A stretch of 63,250 nucleotides of DNA, the filler included, from Ministeria vibrans ATCC 50519 (lineage: Eukaryota; Protista; Filasterea), in assembly GCA_943704425.1 (NCBI GenBank). It is 8 parts of 8 records of this genome, joined end to end, with 100 filler letters (N's around TTAATTAATTAA, not from the genome) between each part and the next. Parts side by side here need not be neighbours in the genome. Positions count along the whole stretch, not along the records: positions 50,719 to 63,250 come from CALSCP010000026.1; 7 more parts are not named here. One strand, written 5' to 3'. Positions 50,576 to 63,250 of the stretch are shown here, piece by piece (the stretch's first letter is position 1; every line of letters begins with the position of its first letter). Under the pieces are notes generated by a model, which did not search any database, was not told where the DNA came from, and saw nothing but the letters and a program-made list of their open reading frames with translations. The position numbers and the translations under genes were made by a program.

Positions 50576-50720
50576 ATTTCAGCCAAAGTCTCTTACGAAC
50601 CCCCCCCCCCCCCCCCCCNNNNNNNNNNNNNNNNNNNNNNNNNNNNNNNNNNNNNNNNNNNNTTAATTAATTAANNNNNNNNNNNNNNNNNNNNNNNNNN
50701 NNNNNNNNNNNNNNNNNNCT

Positions 50721-52047
50721 CCGCCGACCCCCATCGCCGACCCCTTCCTCCCTCACCCCCCCCGCAACCCCTCCCGTCTCGCCCCCGACTGGTGGGACTA
50801 CTCCACCCTCCCTCGCCACATTCTCAAGGAAGCTGCTGCCCTATCCCCTCTTGATCTCCTCCGCTTGCAGCGTGACGGCTTCTCCGTTCGCTTCTTCGAC
50901 TCCAAAGAGGAGCTTCTTCTTGCGCAAGTCAGTCCGCCTTTCACTTGTTTCCTTGCTCAAGCTCACACGTCATATTTTAGGCACTTGAAGTTGTCAGTGA
51001 GTTCAAACAAGCGACGCCAGACAGTCCCTCAGTCGTCTGTGGCTCATTCTCTTCTGTTTCCCACTTACCACTCGTCGCTCAAGTAACATTCAAACACACG
51101 CTATGTCGCTTGCAGCATTGTCACGCACTTACTCACTGTCTTTACTACGCAGTTGATCAACGGGCTGTCAATGGATTTGTCACACTGTCACATTGTTAGT
51201 GCGTGTGAGTTTTCATCGCCTGGGCCCCATCAGCTCAAACCCAAAGGCTCTTCTTCTTCTTCTTCTTCTTCTTTTTCTTCTTCTTCTTCTTCTCCGCTTG
51301 TCGGCTCTTTCTCGTTCCGCAGTGCTCTCAATCACTCTCTCATTGCGCGACTCACTCCCGAACACTCTTTCCCTCCCCGTAACATCCACTCGCCGTCCTC
51401 CGACGTCAATGCCTTCCGTCGTAAATGGAGCGCCCTTCCTCAATGTGCCCTCCTCCAACTCCCCTTCTCCGACTCCATGGTAACTCCCGTGTCATTATAA
51501 CTATTGTGACTGTTTTTATATAATTTTTTATTTATATTATCTTTTTAATTAATTTTTAATTCATCATCCTTCTAATAGCATTTTGGGCTGAACGACCCTC
51601 CGCGCCGCGCCGGTCCCCACGCGACCACCCCGCCCTCCCGCGACACATACCAACATCTTCCTGCGCGCGCTATCGACCTTCACCCGGCGTCACTTGCCGA
51701 GCACGTCCGTCGTGCGCCCGTCTCCGCCACCGGCGGCTCCTTGGTCACCCTGCCCCACACTGCTGTCTCCATTGGCCCCGCAGAGGCCCTCTCTGTCCGC
51801 AAGATATCCTTTTGGCACGATCCTGATCATGATTCACCTTTCATTCTACGTCTCACTACTCTCATGCTTGGCCGAGTACGTGCTTCGTCGTTTGTTTTGA
51901 ACCCGAACGACTCATGCACTTGTCTTCTCTTAGGCCTACATCGACTCCTCTGTCCCCATTTCTCTCTTTTCCGATCATGCCAGTGTTCAGCTGAACCTCC
52001 TTCGCTCTGCCATTGGCTCGTGCGATCCCGCTCTCTTCTCCTTATGA
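50721..52047 (+). CDS. Divergent homolog of a bacterial glucosamine-6-phosphate isomerase/deaminase-like (NagB fold) family; 5 exons, 5'-truncated
   Basis: SRLAPDWWDYSTL...LQRDGFSVRFFDS; ALEVVSEFKQATPDSP..LPLVAQ; HFGLNDPPRR; IDLHP; PHTAVSIGPAE; DSSVPISLFSDH. Introns at 50928-50980, 51083-51152, 51480-51578 and 51876-51933 keep the frame. Confidence 0.75.
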
Positions 52048-52085
52048 ATAAAATGAAATCTAATCATTCATTTTTTCTCAAAACA

Positions 52086-53321
52086 ATGAGCGAACCGTGG
52101 GATCGCGTTGCTGTCTCGGCCGGTTGTGCGTACGCCTACAACATGGAGCTGATGATGTCGGAGACAGGGCGAACGAGGCCGGACAGATCCGCCAAGTGAG
52201 ATTGGCGCTTGGTTTGCATTGGGCGCCAACGGAAAGATTGTGTGTCGCTTTCCTACAGCCGATGGAGAGCCATGTCGGTCGAAGGGGTTTGTGGGCGAGG
52301 GTGTGCGGGATCATTTTACCATGTGCCATCCCACGAGCAAGCACCGCGTTGTTTGTGTCGTCTGCAATTCGTTTGTTGGTGGGAACGAGCTCAAACGTCA
52401 CGTTTCTTCACACCACAGCAACACATTCACAGCCACCGTTATGGAACACGGGAAGACGGTCTACCTGCGAGAGGTGCGTGCGGCATTGGAGCGCGACGGA
52501 GAAGAGGAGGACGTTGAGGGAGAAGTGGCCAAGGTGTTTGGTCGTGGCGAGTACGAGCGAGTCCCAATGGGATTTGAGACGTGGTTGGCGATGGCACGGG
52601 GCGAGAAGGATGATGAGGAGGACACGAGTGTGTTTGAGATGCTGGGAAATGGCAAGGTGCGGTGTCGGTGTCGATTGGTGGACGGACGAGTGTGTGCGGG
52701 AAAGGGATTTGCGCCCGAGTGGGTTGCGCAGCATTTCTCAAACTCCCATCCTCGGAGTGTGTTCCGCGTCAACTGTGTGGTGTGCAAGGAGGATGTAGCA
52801 TCAGAAAGAATCTCGTTTAAGCGCCACCTGCTGCAATCGCACAGTGATGTATTCACTCGTGGCTGTGACTGGCTGAGAGTGTACTCTTCTCTTGTGCGCA
52901 GTGCTCTGGATAAGCGCAGTGCGAGTGAGTCTGTGATTGTGCGTGAGCTGCAGTTGTTGCGTGAGAGTGAGCGAGCGCCGTCGTCATTTGCTGGTTGGCT
53001 GTTGCGTGCGCAGAAGGAGAGGGAAGAGGGGAGTGGGTGTGGTGCGGTGAGTATCATGTGCTGAGTACGTATCGCACTCGATGTGCCATCTGCTCGCAAT
53101 CAGCGCCAGATGCAGGCAAACTGCGTGTTCACCTCCGCACTCAACACTCGTCCGAGTTTACGAGTGCCGTGTTGGCGTCGAACTGGAGGGGTGTGTACAG
53201 CGAGTGTGTGCGGAGTGCAATGTTGAGAGAGGGAGAGAGTGAGAGTGCGATTGAGAGAGAAATGTCGATTTTGTATGAGCATGAGAAAGCGCCGGGCAAT
53301 TTCCATCAGTGGACTGTATAA
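52086..53321 (+). CDS. Three-repeat C2H2 zinc-finger/helical-module protein with an apparent frameshift near 53020-53035
   Basis: Repeats of CxxC...LKRHxxxxH..F...VY...VRxAL...P..F..W; small first intron at about 52126-52186. Confidence 0.65.
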
Positions 53322-53484
53322 TAACAACCCATCTTCTTGGTTTACTTTGAACAACCCGTATACCTCTGGATTAAGTGAACTGCTTTTACAGTTTCTCGCA
53401 AAGACTAATGGATAGTGTGTTTTTCTAATTTCTTCATTGAGTTCATTCTTTAATCTTTTGTGAGTTTGTTTCGTTCCTCTTGCC

Positions 53485-54198
53485 ATGTCTTCAGAGAGCT
53501 CGGTAGTCGTACCGATCAGCGAAGGAAACCGCGCAGAAGCGTCGTTTAGCACGGTGGACGTTGAGTCTGGCTCAGAGCTGTACCGGAACGCCATCGCCAG
53601 CAGCCTGGGCAAGCTGCGCGACGGCCTGCTGGCCATTGGATCTCCTCAGGAGCGAGTGGAGCTGGTGAACAGTGCGGTGCATGAAGAGGACCGTCTTACT
53701 TTGCTTCATGTACACACAATTCAAAGACAAAGTGTGTGCGTGTGTTTTTTTTTGAAAGTTGGTTTGCTCACACGTTCTCTTTCGCTTTCCTTTCAGGCGG
53801 CCTGTAAGTACGTCCACAAGGTTGATGTGAGTGTAGTTGCACTTCTACTGGACTATGGCGCCGATCCAAACGTCCCTGATCGGTTGGGGTGAGTTGTTTT
53901 AACACTAAGCCAGAGCCCCACTCACACACTCTGTCTGTCTGTCTGTCTTGTTACAGCCGAAACTGCATGCACTACTGCGGCATTGCTGGCAATCTCAGGG
54001 CGATTGTAAGCATACCTCCTGCTTGTAGCCTTTTTAACCATTGATTCGCATTCTGTCCTCTGCAGCATCTTCTTGTCCATCGCGGCAGAGGTGACTTGAG
54101 CCTACGTGACACAGACGGCCTCACTCCTCTCATGCAAGCCAGTCGGTATCGCACACACATACACACACACACACACCACAAAGACACACACAAAGACA

Positions 54199-54261
<63 letters not shown>

Positions 54262-56307
54262 TCATTGTATATCTCACTAACATGTGTCATAGCTTTGGAC
54301 AGGCGCGGGTGGCGCAGTATCTGACCAATGTTGGTTGCAGTGCCAACGAGACAGACAACAACGGATGGGTAAGATTGTACTATCACAAATAATAATAACA
54401 ATTAAGAGGCTCAACTATTCGTTCGTTTGTGCAATGATTGGATTGTAAAGATGTGTGTTAGTAATACGAATGTTACAGTTATTGTTATTTCTGTTTGTAT
54501 TGCGAAAAACAATCAATGTCGAAGCTGAAGTCACTTACAATCTACACACACACACACGCCTACACACAAAACAGAATTCATTGCATTGGGCGTGTCGAAA
54601 TAACCATGTGGGAGTAGTCGATTTGCTTCTTAAGAGTTTCGTAAGCGCAGAAATAAAACAAAAAATACCACTCTCACACCTTTCTTTTTATACTTAATTA
54701 TTTTGATTCGTCAAGTTTGGAGTGCGTGACGTTCGTGACACAAACAACAACGGGGAAACTGCAGCCAAAGTGGCTCAGAATTACGGACACTCTGCGTTGG
54801 CCGAACGAATCGTATGAAACAACAAACAAAGCAAAGAACCAATAATTGAGATTGGCGGGACATTTTAATGATCAGAATCATATGGCTCATTTGTGAGTCT
54901 CTTTTTGTCATCCAGTCATATGATTCTGATAATGATTCTTTAGGCGAAAGAGGAAATTGGAACCAACGGATGTTTATCGGGAGTTTTGGGACGGAAACGG
55001 TCCTACACCTTTTTTGTGTTGTATGTTGTGATGATCAGTTTGGGTCATTTGGATTACTTTTGGCTGATTGATAAGAGTAAGTGTGTTGTGTGCGAGAGAT
55101 TGATTTGTACGCGTGGTTAAGTGTTTAATGGTTTATGAGTAGGGACTGATTTGCAGAGGGTTCTTGATCCCCCTTTTTTGTTCTTGTTTCTTCTGTCTTC
55201 CTGTGTCTTTCTTGCGCTGTTCATGTCCAAACCCGGTTACTACCTCAAACACTCTCCGGTACGCATCCCTAAACCTAAACCTTGACGCTAATAACTCGAA
55301 CTCTCATTAATAGAGTGAGGACAAATCGTCTCGTCCAGTGGGCCCTCTCTGTCCGCGTTGTCACTTTGTCCGTCCACTTCGCACAAAACACTGTCCAAGT
55401 AACCCACAAAGCTCTCAAAAACAATCCATCACACGTCCTGTCACCTCACACGCAGTCCAACAATCACTCACAGTCTCTCACTCGCTCGATCAACACTTAC
55501 TCACCGTCTCTTTTTGTCTTCGTTTTTGTTTTTGTTCGCCTCATTTTCTCAGTTTGTGACCAGTGCTGTGCTAAATGGGATCATCACTGCCTCTGGACAA
55601 ACGGTCAGTCACTCTCTCTTTTATCTAATTATTAGAATTATTCTTATGATGTTTTTATAGGGTGTGTTGGCGTTGGAAATTACCACTTGTTTATTCTGTG
55701 GATTGTCACTCAGGTCATTCATCTTTTAGTTGCGCTTGTCATTGTTACTTCTGGTTAGAAGAAGAAAAAATGTCGATATTAGTTTTGACTTGTTCTTTTT
55801 TTTTGGACCTTAGTGTACTTTGCGGCACCCAAAGATTCGCATGATTTTCAATCGATTTTTGCACTGGTTCTGATTGTGGGGAATCTCATTATGTTTCTGT
55901 ATCCAATGGGATCACTGCATTTGCCCAACGCACTCGATGGGATCACATGCAACGAGGCAAGAACCCTTACCCTAGCTAATGATAGTCCCTAACAAGGCCA
56001 ACCCTACCCCTATCAGCACCTCTAAACCCGAATACCTCTAGAGAGCCGCTGTGGGTCGTCACCGCCAAACTGGTCTTTTTCGTCTTTCGTGGACCTTCCA
56101 AAACCCATTTCGTAACCCCTCTCGTTGGACAAACTTTATGTCAATCTTCACCGACAAAAACGTACAAGGACAAACAATCAATCGCTAATTTCACAACACA
56201 CTAAAAACTTTACGATTTCCACTTCTCTCTTATTTAGAATTGGAAGAACAATCGCAATTGGAATGTGTGCGGCGAAACAAACGAAGATAGAGTCAAAGCG
56301 GAACTGA
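53485..56307 (+). CDS. Ankyrin-repeat DHHC palmitoyltransferase (AKR1/ZDHHC13/17-like)
   Basis: ANK repeats (LLLDYGADPN, GLTPLMQA, LHWAC), CPRCHFVRPLRTKHC..CDQCCAKWDHHCLWTNGCVG, TCNE, QNPF. Confidence 0.92.
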
Positions 56308-56405
56308 TCTTTGGCTCATAACTCAACCTCAAAATTATCAACATTACAATTTTTTTGTTCATTATTACAATCATAATTACAATTACACCATAATAGTAAT
56401 AGTAA

Positions 56406-56442
<37 letters not shown>

Positions 56443-56550
56443 TTATTAATCAAGTGTGTCATATTTTCTCCCTCGGTTCAAAACGGAAATGTGTCTCATA
56501 TTTCCCCTCACACACGACAAAATAATCAGCACAATGCATTCATACCACAT

Positions 56551-58470
56551 TCAATTCGAGTTGGATTGTTTTGATTTGGATTGAGTGATCATTCGCTTTG
56601 CTGAGTCGATTCCCTTTGCGGCAATTTGCTTGATTTGCTTGATTTGAGCGGGAGAGACATGAGCGTTTTTTATGGCAAGAATGGCGTTGGCAAAAAGATG
56701 AATTGCTTCGTGTGGGTCGACGTGGTGTTGGGCGGAGAGAAAAAGAGAGGCCTTTTGGATAAGTGTGAGAGCAAATTCGGGTAAACCCACTTCGTTTTCA
56801 GCCTCTGTGTCTGTTTTGAGCTCACGGAGGAAGTTGAGAGCGTCATTGAGGACAGTGTGTGCCTTGACGGTGTCGCCCGAGGCGGCATGGGCAATGCTGA
56901 GGGCGCGCAGACACACCGCGTACGAGTAGCCCAGGTCGGCTCGGATAGGACGCGCCAAACGCACACCCGTCTGCGCGGCCCGCAGCGCCAGTGCCGGCTC
57001 ACCCACCTCCACCCAAACCTCCACCAGCATTGTCGCGAGCGTCGTGCGTATCGTATGACCCTTGAGCTCAGTCAGACGCCGCGATCGTGCCAGCACATGC
57101 GACGCATACACGCCCAGAGAGCGCAGAAAGTATGTGCGGGCGTCGCCTGAGGGCAGTGCAAGAGCTCGCTTGACACTGCCCAGCAGATCGTGTTCGCACA
57201 CCGTCAGCAGCGAATTCGTTTCAAAGCTGAGCAGGCAGAAGATGTTCTCGCGAAGGATGTCCTGAACAAGTGGATGTACGTAGATGGGGTACTCGGACGT
57301 GGTAGGCTCACGCATGCCTGAAACGTGCGCGAGTGAGCGCATCTGCAGCTCACGCACCATTGGGACAAAGAGCGCCAGAGACGGATCTACGTCGCCCATA
57401 ATAGACTTGGCAACGGACGGCACGAGTGGGTCGTTCTCCATGAATGAGAGCACAGCAAGATTGTGCAGCGCAGTCGAACGCATGGACGACTGGTACAGAC
57501 GAAACACCTGCGTCAGATCCGACTTGAACGCTCGCACTGCGTGCATGAGTTTCGTGCGCTTGTCGCTTCCTTTCTTGCCGGCGATCTTCCAGAGCGTTCC
57601 CAGTCGGTTTCGAAAAAGCGCATCGTGTAATTTATCAACGGTCATCGTCTCGCAATTGTCCACAAGATGGTCTGCGGCGAGTTCAAGTGCGAGAGGCAGA
57701 CCACCAAGGATGTCAACAAGGCGAGACAGTGAGGCGACTGTGACCTCTGTGACGGGAGAAGACGACGACGACGAAGAAGATGAAGTAGTAGTGGTAGTAG
57801 TAGCAGCAGCATCAGAAGTAGAAGTGGTGAGAGTGGTGGTGGGTGAAGAACTGTCGAGGCGACGCTGGAGGTACTCGACTCCGAGACGCCCGTTGAACAT
57901 GGCCAGTTTGAGACGTCCCTGGCGACCCTCGACACTCTCGAGGTTAGCTTGCGTTGTCGTGACAATGACGTCGCCTAGGGCACGCAACGCCTCCGCTTGG
58001 TCTGGCGGGTAGTCAATGGCAGAGTCGATGACGACGAGCGCGCGCTTTGTCGGCGGCAGTGTGGGACGAGCCCAGTCCCATTCGGACGCGAGCGGACGGC
58101 GATGCATTCGCACCCACAGCACAGCGGCGTAGTCGGCGGCGTACCGGTGCGCATACGCCGCTGCCAAGGTGCTCTTCCCCACACCATCGAGCCCAGTCAG
58201 GATGGCAGTGCGGCCGGGCGTGACAGACGCCAAAGAAGACGACGGCGCTTGGAGTATTTCCCGCAGCCGCTCCATCGCTCGCTGACGGCCCATAAAATGC
58301 GGCGTGGGCGGCGGGGGGTCATCAATCTCAATCTGGGTCTCACTGGCGCTGGTGGACGGCAGAGAGCATGCAGCATTGCTGCTGCACAAGTGGCGCCACT
58401 GGGTTAGCACGACAGCACTTCGCTGTGATGCGGCCAGGCGTCCAGCGACAGCCATAAAGCGCGTTGGCAT
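56551..58470 (-). CDS. Intronless STAND NB-ARC NTPase with TPR-like C-terminus and a putative mitochondrial presequence
   Basis: FMGRQ, GLDGVGKS (P-loop), LVVIDS (Walker B), VIVTT, GGLPLALELAA, VHPLVQ; helical TPR-like tail. Confidence 0.85.
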   Translation of the reverse strand: MPTRFMAVAGRLAASQRSAVVLTQWRHLCSSNAACSLPSTSASETQIEIDDPPPPTPHFMGRQRAMERLREILQAPSSSLASVTPGRTAILTGLDGVGKSTLAAAYAHRYAADYAAVLWVRMHRRPLASEWDWARPTLPPTKRALVVIDSAIDYPPDQAEALRALGDVIVTTTQANLESVEGRQGRLKLAMFNGRLGVEYLQRRLDSSSPTTTLTTSTSDAAATTTTTTSSSSSSSSSPVTEVTVASLSRLVDILGGLPLALELAADHLVDNCETMTVDKLHDALFRNRLGTLWKIAGKKGSDKRTKLMHAVRAFKSDLTQVFRLYQSSMRSTALHNLAVLSFMENDPLVPSVAKSIMGDVDPSLALFVPMVRELQMRSLAHVSGMREPTTSEYPIYVHPLVQDILRENIFCLLSFETNSLLTVCEHDLLGSVKRALALPSGDARTYFLRSLGVYASHVLARSRRLTELKGHTIRTTLATMLVEVWVEVGEPALALRAAQTGVRLARPIRADLGYSYAVCLRALSIAHAASGDTVKAHTVLNDALNFLRELKTDTEAENEVGLPEFALTLIQKASLFLSAQHHVDPHEAIHLFANAILAIKNAHVSPAQIKQIKQIAAKGIDSAKRMITQSKSKQSNSN

Positions 58471-58560
58471 GAACACCGCAAAGCACGATGGTGAAGAAGA
58501 CAGAGAGGGAGAGAGAGAGAAGGCAAAAAAAAAGATAGAAATTGATCATTTCATTAGAAT

Positions 58561-59598
58561 TTAGAGGACACCCGCTTCATTCTTGAGTTTGTCGATGAGC
58601 TCATCGACACTCGCGACTCGCGCACCACCCTAAGACAAAAAAAAAAAAAACGAAAAGATAGAAAATCAACCAATGAATCAAAATACAAATGAAACAGCGA
58701 GTAAGTCTACCTTGCGTGCGGGAGTTTCGCTGAGAGAGACGCGTGTGATGCGGGGCGTAATGTCAACACCCAGATCGGCCGCCGAGATGGTCTCAATGGG
58801 CTTCTTCTTGGCCTTCATGATGTTGGGCAGGGTCGCATAGCGCGGCTGGTTCAATCTGGTGTATGCAAGTGTGTGAGTGTCAACGGCGCATGCGATTGGG
58901 TGGGCTACCTGAGATCGGCGGTGATGACACACGGCACTTGGACATTGAGTGTCTCCAGGCCACCGTCCACCTCGCGCGTCACATTCAGACTCCCGTCTTC
59001 CACCTTCACCTCAGAGGCAAATGCTGCCTGAGGCCAGTCCAGCAGCGCAGACAGCATCTGTCCCGTCTGGTTTGCATCGTCGTCAATCGCCTGTTTCCCA
59101 AGAATCACTGTATTCGCCTTGACACCAAGCAGTACAAACGGTCATCCAAAGCGCACAAAACAAAACGGTCTCATCCATCCCACTCACCTCGTTCTTCTCA
59201 ACAATCTTCTGGAACAGCTTGGCGACGGCAAGTGGCTGTAGCGTCTCAAACTCATCATCCGACATCTACATATGAAAATGAGATCCCCTCTTTTTTTTTC
59301 TTCTTCCTATCTCTCTCTCTCTCTGAGTGCGTTGCGCGGCCATTCTCACCTGAACATGCACAGCCCTGTCGGCCCCCATTGCCAAGGCAGTCCGCAGGGT
59401 CTCAGCAGACGCCTTGGGGCCACAGGAGACGGCAATGACTTCACTCGCTTTCTTCTGCTCTTTCATTCGCACTGCCTACACATCGCCAAAACCCCACGCG
59501 TCAGCGTCGATCACCACACACGCCACACAGGGCACACCCTCAACAGAGAGACTGCGCCCATGCTGCGTTCACATATTCTTTTTTGAGGACAGAGAGTG

Positions 59599-59629
<31 letters not shown>

Positions 59630-59821
59630 AGAGAGAGAGAGAGTAACTCATTTTTTGTGTGTGTGTGTGTGTGTTGTGACCTCTTCCACGGCAATCTCAT
59701 CAAAGGGGTTCATGCTATGCTTGACTTGCTGGCGGACGACGCCTGCGCCGGCGGGGGCAAGGCGGACCTTGACGGCGTAGTCGATGGCGCGTTTGCAGCC
59801 CACGATCACTCTCAATGCCAT
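58561..59821 (-). CDS. ETFB: Electron transfer flavoprotein beta subunit
   Basis: [63 protein letters not shown]. Confidence 0.97.
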
Positions 59822-60242
59822 GCTGGGGGGGTGTGCGTGTGGGGCGGTCGGGTGTGCGACTGACAATAGATTGAAAATATTGTGATCATTTTTCAATTTT
59901 CGTATTTCATTCGTGATCTGAAATTTGAAAAAGAGAAAAGAACGGAAACGTAAATAGTACACAAGTAGTACAAAGCAATACAGCGCTTCCACCAGAGAGT
60001 CAGAGACCAAACACCAAAGCGTGAGAAAGAATCAAAAGATGAAGCGCACAATGCACTGACATTTTAACTCATAGTTCATGATCAGGTTTGTTTGTGTCCC
60101 GACTGTGTACTCACACATGGGCTGTTCAGTGATCACACCTGCTCGGCAGTGACACCTGTCTAGGCACTACTCCGCACTTACTCCACCGAGCGCAAAGGAC
60201 ACCACTGGTCAATCTTATATGCAATTCAGTGGATTCCTCTTT

Positions 60243-60269
60243 TTTCGCGCCTTGATCATTTTTTGGCGC
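60243..60269 (+). promoter_or_regulatory. Tandem E2F-type sites TTTCGCGC and TTTGGCGC upstream of MCM3
   Basis: Exact TTTSSCGC matches about 150-180 bp upstream of the ATG at 60421. Confidence 0.6.
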
Positions 60270-60420
60270 CGGCCGGCATTTACTCATTGATCATTCTATT
60301 TCCCTTGAGCCCGCTCTGCCGCCCCCTCCCGTTGCGGCTGATCTTGGTCTCCCACCCCACACGAGTCGACTTCTTCCTCTCCGCTGCCCCTTCAGGCCGG
60401 AGCACTCGTTGTAATCGATC

Positions 60421-63135
<2,715 letters not shown>

Positions 63136-63142
63136 TGACAGG

Positions 63143-63250
<108 letters not shown>

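What the first reader, a model, noticed from the sequence alone, without database searches (positions are those of the whole stretch)
56551..58470. NLR-like NB-ARC-TPR protein with a mitochondrial presequence where the effector domain should be
Seen in sequence: an intronless 639-aa ORF in an intron-rich genome, with a complete NB-ARC motif set (FxGR, GxxGxGKS, hhhhD, GLPLAL, HPLVQ) followed by TPR-like helices. The N-terminus MPTRFMAVAGRLAASQRSAVVLTQWRHLCSS is Arg/Ala/Ser-rich, has no acidic residues and ends in an R-x-L|xS pattern typical of MPP/Icp55 cleavage. The gene starts only ~90 bp after the ETFB stop, on the same strand. Established: fungal and bacterial NB-ARC-TPR proteins normally carry an N-terminal effector (TIR, HeLo, PNP, nuclease) and act in the cytosol. 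Inference: this may be an effector-less STAND sensor imported into mitochondria, i.e. an organellar surveillance system or a domesticated bacterial-type gene.
Basis: partly seen in the sequence, partly recalled or inferred. Interest (0 to 1): 0.8.

Follow-up and report, generated by a model that had tools for sequence, protein, structure and literature searches.

The report
Effector-less NB-ARC–TPR switch, possibly mitochondrial
A single-exon gene in a compact, intron-rich eukaryote encodes a very divergent bacterial-type NB-ARC/TPR "immune-receptor-like" ATPase. Where the killing or signalling domain normally sits, it has only a short leader that looks like a mitochondrial import signal; the import itself is untested, and a vertebrate precedent (NLRX1) exists.

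Summary
On the minus strand, 56551-58470 is an intact 639-aa ORF. It starts 90 nt after the stop of a six-exon ETF-beta gene on the same strand.

- **Family:** it is a real but very divergent NB-ARC-type STAND NTPase. Residues 52-206 are the P-loop domain, 245-417 the helical plus winged-helix part, and 420-639 TPR-like helices. FxGR, Walker A, Walker B, GLPL and the MHD-type His are all conserved against 48 homologues. The sensor-I Arg is lost. Pfam PF00931 itself does not hit.
- **Fold:** an alignment-based AlphaFold model matches a STAND-TPR crystal structure, Apaf-1, CED-4 and plant NLRs.
- **Relatives:** named relatives are bacterial (Streptomyces, Ktedonobacteraceae; TIR- or HTH-NB-ARC-TPR). 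None of 1.84 billion representatives scores better than E=5.7e-10.
- **Origin:** codon usage is native and the gene has no introns. That fits an old, ameliorated bacterial-type acquisition.
- **N-terminus:** there is no room for an effector domain. The upstream spacer has no AG acceptor, so no upstream exon can splice in ahead of the ATG.
- **Import:** residues 1-43 have no acidic residue and 4 Arg, with low-confidence predicted helices. That fits a matrix presequence, but no trained predictor or ortholog could test it.

Verdict: partly supported. This is a new variant of a known kind, since NLRX1 is an analogous mitochondrial NLR.

The parts
56551..58470 (-). Complete single-exon CDS, 639 aa plus stop: the STAND NTPase-TPR gene
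   Evidence: Codon usage is native: GC3 0.63 against ETFB 0.69 and MCM3 0.625, and RSCU r=0.76 against 0.20-0.53 for the other five frames.
58342..58470 (-). Residues 1-43, presequence-like leader (4 Arg, no Asp/Glu/Lys, Ala/Ser/Thr-rich); R26-H27-L28|C29 is a candidate processing site
   Evidence: AlphaFold gives two low-confidence helices (2-13, 16-29) followed by disorder. No Pfam match.
57853..58317 (-). Residues 52-206, P-loop nucleotide-binding domain: FxGR 59-62, Walker A 93-100 (58171-58194), Walker B 145-149 (58024-58038); sensor-I position is T173/Q174 instead of Arg
   Evidence: Five parallel strands with pLDDT 84-95. Sub-threshold AAA_16 and nSTAND hits.
57748..57852 (-). Residues 207-241, Ser/Thr-rich low-complexity insertion that is absent from the homologues
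   Evidence: pLDDT below 50. It is a codon-repeat tract. A weak in-frame GT..AG pair (105 or 114 nt) cannot be excluded.
57220..57738 (-). Residues 245-417, helical domain plus winged helix (ARC; equivalent to DUF7779 in the homologues), with GLPLAL 257-262 (57685-57702) and VHPLVQ 398-403 (57262-57279)
   Evidence: Fold matches to Apaf-1, CED-4 and NRC1.
56554..57213 (-). Residues 420-639, about ten helices, a short TPR-like array
   Evidence: TPR_12 E=2.5e-4, below the cutoff. phmmer aligns 464-585 to the C-terminal parts of several homologues; other members of the hit set carry TPR_10/TPR_12 there, but those particular proteins were not scanned. Helical repeats with pLDDT 60-83. The top fold hit, 6MFV, is a STAND-TPR protein.
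58471..58560 (-). 90-nt pyrimidine-rich spacer between the ETFB stop and the STAND ATG, containing no AG dinucleotide
58561..59821 (-). Upstream neighbour: ETF beta-subunit gene, six exons (59821-59681, 59475-59350, 59265-59188, 59117-58909, 58855-58711, 58629-58561), 255 aa

Best explanation
This is a genuine nuclear gene of an unidentified, compact, intron-rich eukaryote. It encodes a highly divergent member of the bacterial-type NB-ARC / winged-helix / TPR branch of STAND NTPases.

Origin (inferred): it was most likely acquired long ago from bacteria, or as an intronless copy, and has since been fully ameliorated.

Architecture (shown): the usual N-terminal TIR, HTH or other effector domain is missing. 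In its place is a leader of about 45 residues.

Localisation (inferred): the leader most probably acts as a cleavable mitochondrial matrix presequence.

Mechanism (inferred from the family): the TPR array holds the nucleotide-binding module in a closed, ADP-bound state. When a ligand binds the TPRs, nucleotide exchange and oligomerisation follow. With no built-in effector, the output would have to be scaffolding or sequestration of a partner, by analogy with what is proposed for NLRX1 in vertebrate mitochondria. Loss of the sensor-I arginine suggests slow or absent hydrolysis, so the protein would behave as a long-lived switch rather than a cycling enzyme.
For: Gene reality:
- Intact 639-codon ORF.
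- RSCU correlation of 0.76 with the neighbouring ETFB and MCM3 exons, against 0.20-0.53 in the other five frames; GC3 0.63 against 0.69 and 0.625.
- It lies between intron-containing eukaryotic genes, so it is not bacterial contamination.

Family:
- NCBIfam FxSxx_TPR scores 7e-26.
- 797 hits at E<=1e-3 in the exhaustive search. Of the 10 hits scanned, seven carry PF00931, six DUF7779 and seven TPR_10/TPR_12, with TIR or HTH N-termini in seven.
- The conserved motif columns are retained.
- The model built on the alignment has pLDDT 72.8 and pTM 0.71. It matches 6MFV (STAND-TPR, 2e-8), Apaf-1 (1z6t, TM 0.45-0.49), CED-4, the NRC1 NB-ARC (TMt 0.66), MalT and Avs3.
- The ESM Atlas neighbours are NB-ARC plus TPR_12 clusters.

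No effector domain:
- The conserved P52 and the FxGR motif begin the NOD.
- No Pfam match lies in residues 1-58.
- No AG acceptor lies in the 90-nt spacer.

Presequence:
- The first acidic residue is at position 44, with P=0.011 at the protein's own composition. The median position is 6 in 141 homologues.
- Net charge is +4 over the first 30 residues.
- The hydrophobic moment of residues 3-13 sits at the protein's 95th percentile.
- An R-3-like site, RHL|CS, lies at residues 26-30.
- Two predicted helices are followed by a disordered linker.

Precedent: the NLRX1 matrix-targeting sequence (PMC10837482).
Against: - Import is not tested. No TargetP, MitoFates or DeepLoc run, no proteomics and no RNA-seq were available.
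- The amphipathicity of the 18-residue window is ordinary (0.336 against a 95th percentile of 0.468).
- The residue after the proposed cut is Cys, not Ser/Ala.
- Both candidate start codons (M1, M6) have a pyrimidine at -3 (read).
- No ortholog exists in 1.84 billion representatives (best E=5.7e-10). Neither conservation of the leader nor purifying selection could therefore be assessed.
- The organism is unidentified, so a plastid-type transit peptide cannot be formally excluded.
- PF00931 does not hit and the sensor-I Arg is missing. The ATPase could be inactive.
Confidence: 0.5

Rival explanations
1. It is a cytosolic, effector-less NB-ARC-TPR protein. The basic, acid-free leader is only a disordered N-terminal tail. 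The protein acts in the cytosol as a sensor, decoy or regulator, possibly paired with an effector encoded elsewhere.
For: About half of fungal NLRs have no recognisable N-terminal domain (PMC4986451). In the control set, 6 of 141 bacterial homologues also have no acidic residue in their first 29 residues or more, and 19 of 141 have net charge >= +4 in the first 30. The 18-residue hydrophobic moment is unremarkable. pLDDT for residues 1-45 is low.
Against: A 43-residue acid-free, Arg/Ala/Ser-rich start followed by an acidic linker (ETQIEIDD) is the textbook layout of a presequence (established knowledge). It is also the longest acid-free run in the protein.
Confidence: 0.3
2. Translation starts at a downstream Met (M60 or M66), and the first ~60 codons are 5' UTR or a leaky-scanned alternative. 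The main product would then be a bare NOD-TPR protein without any leader.
For: M1 and M6 have a weak start context (T at -3), whereas M66 has G at -3 and G at +4 (sequence). With only 90 nt to ETFB, there is little room for a promoter and 5' UTR.
Against: The frame is open for 85 codons upstream of M60. Codons 1-58 have the same position-specific GC as the rest (GC3 0.655 against 0.644). M60 lies inside the conserved FxGR motif, and M66 would delete that motif together with the conserved P52.
Confidence: 0.08
3. It is a decaying or non-functional relic of a horizontally acquired bacterial STAND gene that happens still to be open.
For: No close relative exists anywhere. The sensor-I Arg is lost, there is a deletion of about 22 residues after strand 2, and a 35-residue low-complexity insertion lies in the NOD. 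PF00931 is not detected.
Against: A 1.9-kb ORF without a stop, native codon usage and retention of every other invariant residue of the family argue for continued selection. The AlphaFold NOD core is confident, with pLDDT 84-95.
Confidence: 0.07
4. The short N-terminus is an amyloid or prion-like signalling motif, like the HET-s, PP or sigma motifs of fungal NLRs and the analogous bacterial motifs. It would activate a separately encoded effector.
For: Short N-terminal motifs replace effector domains in fungal NACHT and NB-ARC-TPR proteins (PMC4986451).
Against: Such systems have an adjacent gene with a matching C-terminal motif. Here the neighbours are ETFB, whose C-terminus is unrelated, and a convergent ankyrin-DHHC gene. 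By eye, the leader has no repeated G/N/Q-rich pattern.
Confidence: 0.03

Closest known systems
Bacterial TIR/HTH-NB-ARC-DUF7779-TPR_10/12 STAND proteins (annotated by NCBI as 'FxSxx-COOH system tetratricopeptide repeat protein', NF040586; e.g. Streptomyces scabiei, Ktedonobacteraceae)
   Same: The order of modules and all key NOD motifs are the same. These are the best sequence matches.
   Different: - Identity is only 18-27%.
- The score of 90.9 bits is far below the 300-bit family cutoff.
- It has no N-terminal domain.
- Its TPR array is much shorter.
- It has a deletion after strand 2 and a Ser/Thr insertion.
- It sits in a eukaryotic chromosome among spliced genes, with no FxSxx peptide or maturase context.
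NLRX1 (vertebrate mitochondrial NLR)
   Same: It is a STAND/NLR whose N-terminal 'effector' position is occupied by a matrix-targeting sequence. The first 39 residues are removed in the matrix (PMC10837482). This is the same design idea as proposed here.
   Different: NLRX1 is NACHT-LRR, not NB-ARC-TPR. No sequence relationship beyond the P-loop was seen in any search, so the resemblance would be convergent. NLRX1's import is shown experimentally; import of this protein is not.
Apaf-1 / CED-4 / plant NLR NB-ARC modules
   Same: The NBD-HD1-WHD fold (Foldseek E 1e-7 to 1e-5, TM up to 0.49 with Apaf-1 and 0.66 on the NRC1 NB-ARC), plus the GLPL and MHD-type His motifs.
   Different: It lacks CARD, CC or TIR domains. 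It has TPR rather than WD40 or LRR repeats. PF00931 is not significant and the sensor-I Arg is absent.
AfsR (Streptomyces SARP-NB-ARC-TPR regulator; PDB 8k60, 8jke)
   Same: It is the best sequence hit among solved structures (E about 1e-3, across the FxGR and Walker A region). It has the same NOD-TPR layout.
   Different: AfsR has an N-terminal DNA-binding SARP/BTAD domain, and this protein does not. The similarity is marginal.
Eukaryotic NB-ARC-TPR proteins (fungi, Ectocarpus, Acanthamoeba)
   Same: The same broad architecture has been reported in several eukaryotic lineages, where the proteins are proposed as pattern-recognition receptors (PMC4053784 and PMC4986451).
   Different: No such eukaryotic protein appeared as a close relative here. 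Those described carry N-terminal domains or motifs and are not reported to be organellar.

Membership tests
NB-ARC / AP-ATPase clade of STAND NTPases | Walker A GxxxxGK[ST] | tested here: met
   G93-LDGVG-K99-S100; G96, G98 and K99 are invariant in 48 homologues
NB-ARC / AP-ATPase clade of STAND NTPases | Walker B hhhhD | tested here: met
   L145-VVI-D149; D149 is invariant. The next residue is S here and N in 41/48 of this clade.
NB-ARC / AP-ATPase clade of STAND NTPases | Sensor-I arginine (RNBS-B 'T[ST]R') | tested here: not met
   The column holds R in 40/48 homologues; the query has T173 (Q174 next)
NB-ARC / AP-ATPase clade of STAND NTPases | GLPL motif in the helical domain and MHD-type His in the winged helix | tested here: met
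   G257-LPLAL-262 and V-H399-PLVQ; L258, P259, A261 and H399 are at least 90% conserved
NB-ARC / AP-ATPase clade of STAND NTPases | Pfam PF00931 at or above its gathering score | tested here: not met
   No PF00931 hit even at E<=1. The best hits are nSTAND_NTPase5 at 27 bits (cutoff 34) and AAA_16 at 26 bits (cutoff 32.6). Seven of ten scanned homologues do carry PF00931.
NB-ARC / AP-ATPase clade of STAND NTPases | NBD-HD1-WHD three-domain fold | tested here: met
   A model with pLDDT 72.8 and pTM 0.71 matches 6MFV, Apaf-1, CED-4, NRC1/2, Sr35, MalT and Avs3 at Foldseek probability 1.00
FxSxx-COOH system TPR protein (NCBIfam NF040586) | Score at or above the equivalog cutoff (300 bits), and genomic association with the FxSxx peptide system | tested here: not met
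   90.9 bits, E=7e-26. The neighbours are ETFB, MCM3 and ankyrin-DHHC.
TPR repeat array | Significant TPR profile match and helical-hairpin repeats | tested here: inconclusive
   TPR_12 scores 21.6 bits, below the 30.1 cutoff, E=2.5e-4. About ten antiparallel helices are predicted. The region aligns to the C-terminal parts of several homologues.
Mitochondrial matrix presequence | 20-60 N-terminal residues rich in Arg/Ala/Ser/Leu, devoid of acidic residues, able to form an amphipathic helix, with Arg at -2/-3 of a cleavage site | tested here: met
   Residues 1-43 hold 4 R and no D/E. The maximum muH over 11 residues is 0.589, equal to the protein's 95th percentile. RHL|CS lies at 26-30. These are my own heuristic measures, not a trained predictor.
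Mitochondrial matrix presequence | Positive call by a trained predictor, or demonstrated import and processing | not testable with these tools
   No TargetP, MitoFates or DeepLoc run, and no localisation or proteome data, were available.
NLRX1-like mitochondrial NLR | NACHT NOD plus LRR sensor, homologous to NLRX1 | tested here: not met
   The NOD is of the NB-ARC type and the repeats are TPR-like. The resemblance is functional analogy only.
Amyloid-signalling NLR (HET-s/PP/sigma-type N-terminal motif) | Adjacent effector gene carrying a matching motif | tested here: not met
   The upstream gene is ETFB and the downstream gene is a convergent ankyrin-DHHC gene; neither has a matching sequence

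The most novel reading that the evidence does not exclude
A unicellular eukaryote has taken a bacterial NB-ARC-TPR immune-type switch, stripped it of its effector domain, and given it a matrix presequence. It now operates inside mitochondria. That would be an independent, convergent counterpart of vertebrate NLRX1 and the first organelle-resident NB-ARC-TPR STAND protein.
Probability: 0.4. Interest if true: 0.65.

Novelty: new variant of a known kind. Interest (0 to 1): 0.5.

Why it matters
STAND/NLR proteins are the common currency of intracellular immunity and cell-death control in bacteria, plants, fungi and animals. Almost all known ones act in the cytosol through a built-in effector domain.

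A second, independently evolved NLR-type switch working inside mitochondria would suggest that organellar surveillance, or regulation by nucleotide-gated oligomerisation, is a recurrent solution rather than a vertebrate oddity. It would also provide a simple, intronless, effector-less model in which to ask what such a switch senses.

If import is not confirmed, this is one more lineage-specific, effector-less NB-ARC-TPR gene of bacterial type in a eukaryote. That would be of modest interest, mainly for the history of gene transfer.

Tried and rejected
- **Exact look-up of the protein, the word search and the exhaustive phmmer search.** No ortholog, paralog or self-hit turned up. Conservation of the leader, dN/dS and a taxon-labelled phylogeny were therefore impossible.
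- **Organism identification.**
  - Rfam found nothing in the piece.
  - The MCM3 exon matches human MCM3 best among solved structures.
  - The best of 5.8 billion proteins is only 64-78% identical to that exon, and the few organism-named hits come from scattered lineages (a fish, yeasts, a nematode, a plant, a myxozoan).
  - Metagenome contig L001, which carries the fullest MCM3 exon match, shows no ETFB/STAND synteny and no STAND relative by tblastn.
  - The organism remains unidentified. Nothing suggests it is human.
- **Single-sequence AlphaFold.** It gave an unusable NOD (pLDDT 48). It was replaced by the alignment-based model.
- **PADLOC.** Only trivial P-loop hits, so the protein is not a known anti-phage Avs-type family.
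- **Mobile-element hypothesis.** No terminal repeats or target-site duplications flank the gene; only microsatellites were found.
- **Recent HGT or contamination.** Rejected because codon usage is native and the neighbours are spliced eukaryotic genes.
- **ETFB-STAND read-through fusion.** The ATG is in frame with the ETFB stop, but a second stop (TGA 58548-58546) intervenes.
- **The AfsR alignment of residues 10-58 to the end of its BTAD domain.** The hit as a whole is marginal (E about 1e-3) and its identities cluster in the FxGR and Walker A region. I did not take it as evidence for a degenerate effector domain.
- **Joined ETFB exons.** The exons were joined only inside a script, to check the reading frame and compute codon statistics. 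No database search was run with the joined protein; searches used single exons by reference.
Full report
**What is there**

The piece (50719-63250) is a gene-dense stretch of a eukaryotic chromosome, rich in (CA)n and (GA)n microsatellites. On the minus strand, 56551-58470 is an uninterrupted ORF of 639 codons.

Directly upstream on the same strand lies a complete electron-transfer-flavoprotein beta-subunit gene. I could model it as six GT-AG exons: 59821-59681, 59475-59350, 59265-59188, 59117-58909, 58855-58711 and 58629-58561. They encode 255 aa. Its fourth exon matches human ETFB at E=4e-25.

The ETFB stop is at 58563-58561 and the STAND ATG at 58470, so the spacer is exactly 90 nt. It is pyrimidine-rich and contains no AG dinucleotide.

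The other neighbours are:
- an MCM3 gene on the plus strand, from about 60780 to the end of the piece
- an ankyrin-repeat / DHHC gene (53464 to about 56000, plus strand)
- a repeated zinc-finger gene (52219-53318)

The exon joining for ETFB was done only inside a script, to check the frame and compute codon statistics. No database search was run with the joined protein.

**Is the ORF a real, native gene?**

- Its GC3 is 0.63, which matches ETFB (0.69) and the MCM3 exons (0.625).
- Its relative synonymous codon usage correlates at r=0.76 with those neighbours. That is higher than ETFB against MCM3 (0.64) and well above its own five alternative frames (0.20-0.53).
- The first 58 codons have the same third-position GC as the rest (0.655 against 0.644).
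- The apparent GC 'island' is only the contrast between one long exon and AT-rich non-coding DNA. ETFB introns are 43% GC.
- No inverted or direct terminal repeats flank the gene.

So it is neither contamination nor a recent insertion. It has no introns, whereas ETFB has five in 768 nt of coding sequence. That is a real outlier for this locus. It fits acquisition as an intronless copy, either bacterial or retroposed, followed by long residence.

**What family is it?**

Pfam's NB-ARC model does not hit, even at E<=1. The best Pfam matches all fall below their cutoffs: nSTAND_NTPase5, AAA_16 and TPR_12. NCBIfam's 'FxSxx-COOH system TPR protein' model, which is an NB-ARC-TPR family, gives E=7e-26. 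At 90.9 bits that is still far under its 300-bit cutoff.

The word search found 18 weak hits. The exhaustive phmmer search of 1.84 billion representatives found 797 hits at E<=1e-3, but none at or below 1e-10; the best was 5.7e-10. Neither search, nor an exact look-up, returned the protein itself.

Of the ten hits scanned against Pfam, seven carry PF00931 (NB-ARC), six DUF7779 (winged helix) and seven TPR_10/TPR_12. Five have a TIR and two an HTH N-terminal domain. The hits that carry organism names are bacterial, from Streptomyces and Ktedonobacteraceae. ESM Atlas neighbours are also NB-ARC plus TPR_12 clusters.

In a 49-sequence alignment the query is 18-27% identical to each homologue, yet it keeps the invariant and near-invariant columns:
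- P52
- F59, G61 and R62
- G93, G96, G98 and K99
- W119
- D149
- T171
- L258, P259 and A261
- H399

It departs from the family in four ways:
- The sensor-I arginine (R in 40 of 48) is T173/Q174.
- About 22 residues are missing after strand 2.
- A 35-residue Ser/Thr tract (207-241) is inserted.
- The TPR part is short.

AlphaFold without an alignment failed on the NOD. With the alignment it gave pLDDT 72.8 and pTM 0.71, with a five-stranded P-loop core at pLDDT 84-95.

Foldseek then returned the following, all at probability 1.00:
- 6MFV, a STAND-TPR protein
- ADP-bound Apaf-1 (TM 0.45-0.49)
- CED-4
- plant NLR NB-ARC modules (NRC1 TMt 0.66)
- MalT
- Avs3

I therefore file it as a very divergent NB-ARC-type STAND NTPase with a TPR-like sensor. 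It is not a member of the FxSxx equivalog, and it is not a recognisable anti-phage Avs family.

**The missing effector**

The conserved NOD begins at P52 in every aligned homologue. In the homologues, a domain of 90-600 residues precedes that point. Here only about 50 residues do, and no profile matches them.

An upstream coding exon is essentially excluded. ETFB occupies the upstream DNA. The ORF's own frame closes at 58548-58546. No AG acceptor exists anywhere in the spacer.

**The leader**

- Residues 1-43 contain four Arg, one His and no Lys, Asp or Glu. They are rich in Ala, Ser and Thr.
- This is the longest acid-free run in the protein. It has a probability of 0.011 at the protein's own acidic-residue frequency.
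- In 141 database homologues that start with Met, the median first acidic residue is at position 6. Only 6 reach position 30.
- The run is followed by an acidic, Pro-rich linker (ETQIEIDDPPPP).
- The model predicts two helices (2-13 and 16-29) at low confidence, then disorder.
- The 11-residue hydrophobic moment at 3-13 is at the protein's 95th percentile. The 18-residue value is ordinary.
- R26-H27-L28|C29-S30 resembles an R-3 processing site, except that Cys follows the cut.

All of this is what a matrix presequence looks like (established knowledge of presequence composition). These are my own heuristic measures, and no trained predictor was available. There are no orthologues with which to test conservation. 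The start-codon contexts of M1 and M6 are weak. The organism is unidentified, so a plastid-type transit peptide cannot be formally excluded. I put mitochondrial import at roughly even odds, somewhat favoured over a purely cytosolic protein.

**How it would work**

- Shown: a P-loop with the Walker A lysine and Walker B aspartate, the GLPL and His-containing winged-helix elements that in Apaf-1 and plant NLRs clamp ADP in the resting state, and a C-terminal helical repeat sensor.
- Inferred from the family: ligand binding to the repeats releases the closed state. That allows nucleotide exchange and oligomerisation.
- Inferred from the architecture: with no built-in effector, the output must be recruitment or sequestration of a partner.
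- Inferred from the sequence: without the sensor-I arginine, hydrolysis is probably slow. That would favour a long-lived 'on' state or a purely scaffolding role.
- Not indicated by any evidence here: what the protein senses.

**Comparison with what is known**

The design 'NLR with a mitochondrial targeting sequence in place of the effector domain' already exists. Vertebrate NLRX1 has a functional matrix-targeting sequence, and its first 39 residues are removed in the matrix (PMC10837482). NLRX1 is NACHT-LRR and unrelated beyond the P-loop, so this would be convergence.

NB-ARC-TPR proteins are known in fungi, brown algae and Acanthamoeba. About half of fungal NLRs lack an annotated N-terminal domain (PMC4986451 and PMC4053784). 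Lack of an effector is therefore not unusual in itself. A full-text search for NB-ARC + TPR + 'mitochondrial targeting' found no paper.

**Verdict**

'Effector-less' and 'bacterial-type' are well supported; 'imported into mitochondria' is plausible but untested.
- It is a new variant of a known kind.
- Interest is moderate. The idea is testable with one GFP fusion and would be a neat case of convergence. It currently rests on composition alone, in an orphan protein from an unidentified lineage.

Noticed in passing
window 52219-53318 (+): An ORF pair encodes three copies of a module of about 110 residues. Each copy has a Cys...Cys...His...His pattern (zf-Di19 E=6e-7) followed by a conserved 'VRSA...ES...E...APxxFxxW' tail. 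It looks like a lineage-specific, largely intronless zinc-finger protein.
   Followed up: partly
window 53464-~56000 (+): Ankyrin-repeat exons are followed by a DHHC cysteine-rich domain split by introns ('C..C...RP.R.KHC' then 'C..C..K.DHHCLW.N'). This looks like an Akr1/ZDHHC13/17-type palmitoyltransferase gene, convergent with the STAND gene. The DHHC part was read by eye; Pfam hit only the ankyrin exons.
   Followed up: partly
window ~60780-63250 (+): An MCM3 gene with several introns is cut by the piece's edge. Its P-loop exon (62818-63135) is most similar to human MCM3 among solved structures. It is only 64-78% identical to the best of 5.8 billion database proteins, so the source lineage appears unsampled in the protein collections.
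   Followed up: partly
window 58471-58563 (-): The STAND ATG is in frame with the ETFB stop codon (90 nt = 30 codons), but a second stop (TGA 58548-58546) intervenes. The spacer is a pyrimidine tract with no AG. The ETFB 3' end and the STAND promoter and 5' UTR must overlap, or the two genes are co-transcribed.
   Followed up: partly
window 57748-57852 (-): The Ser/Thr-rich tract (residues 207-241) is made of repeated ACC/ACT/TCT/TCG codons and is absent from all homologues. In-frame GT..AG pairs of 105 and 114 nt with weak donors exist, so an in-frame intron cannot be excluded without RNA data.
   Followed up: partly
window 56219-56500; 60850-61050; 62120-62300; 63140-63250: Long microsatellites lie in intergenic DNA and introns: (TAT/ATA)n just downstream of the STAND stop, (GA)n and (CA)n inside the first MCM3 intron region, and (CA)n at the end of the piece.
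   Followed up: no
L001 (JGI metagenome 3300056850, contig Ga0558718_01465, 116.6 kb): A eukaryotic metagenome contig carries an MCM3 gene with a similar exon. Its other called genes have weak Pfam hits to MACPF, SGL_GH162 and Swi3. It has no ETFB or STAND gene next to MCM3.
   Followed up: partly
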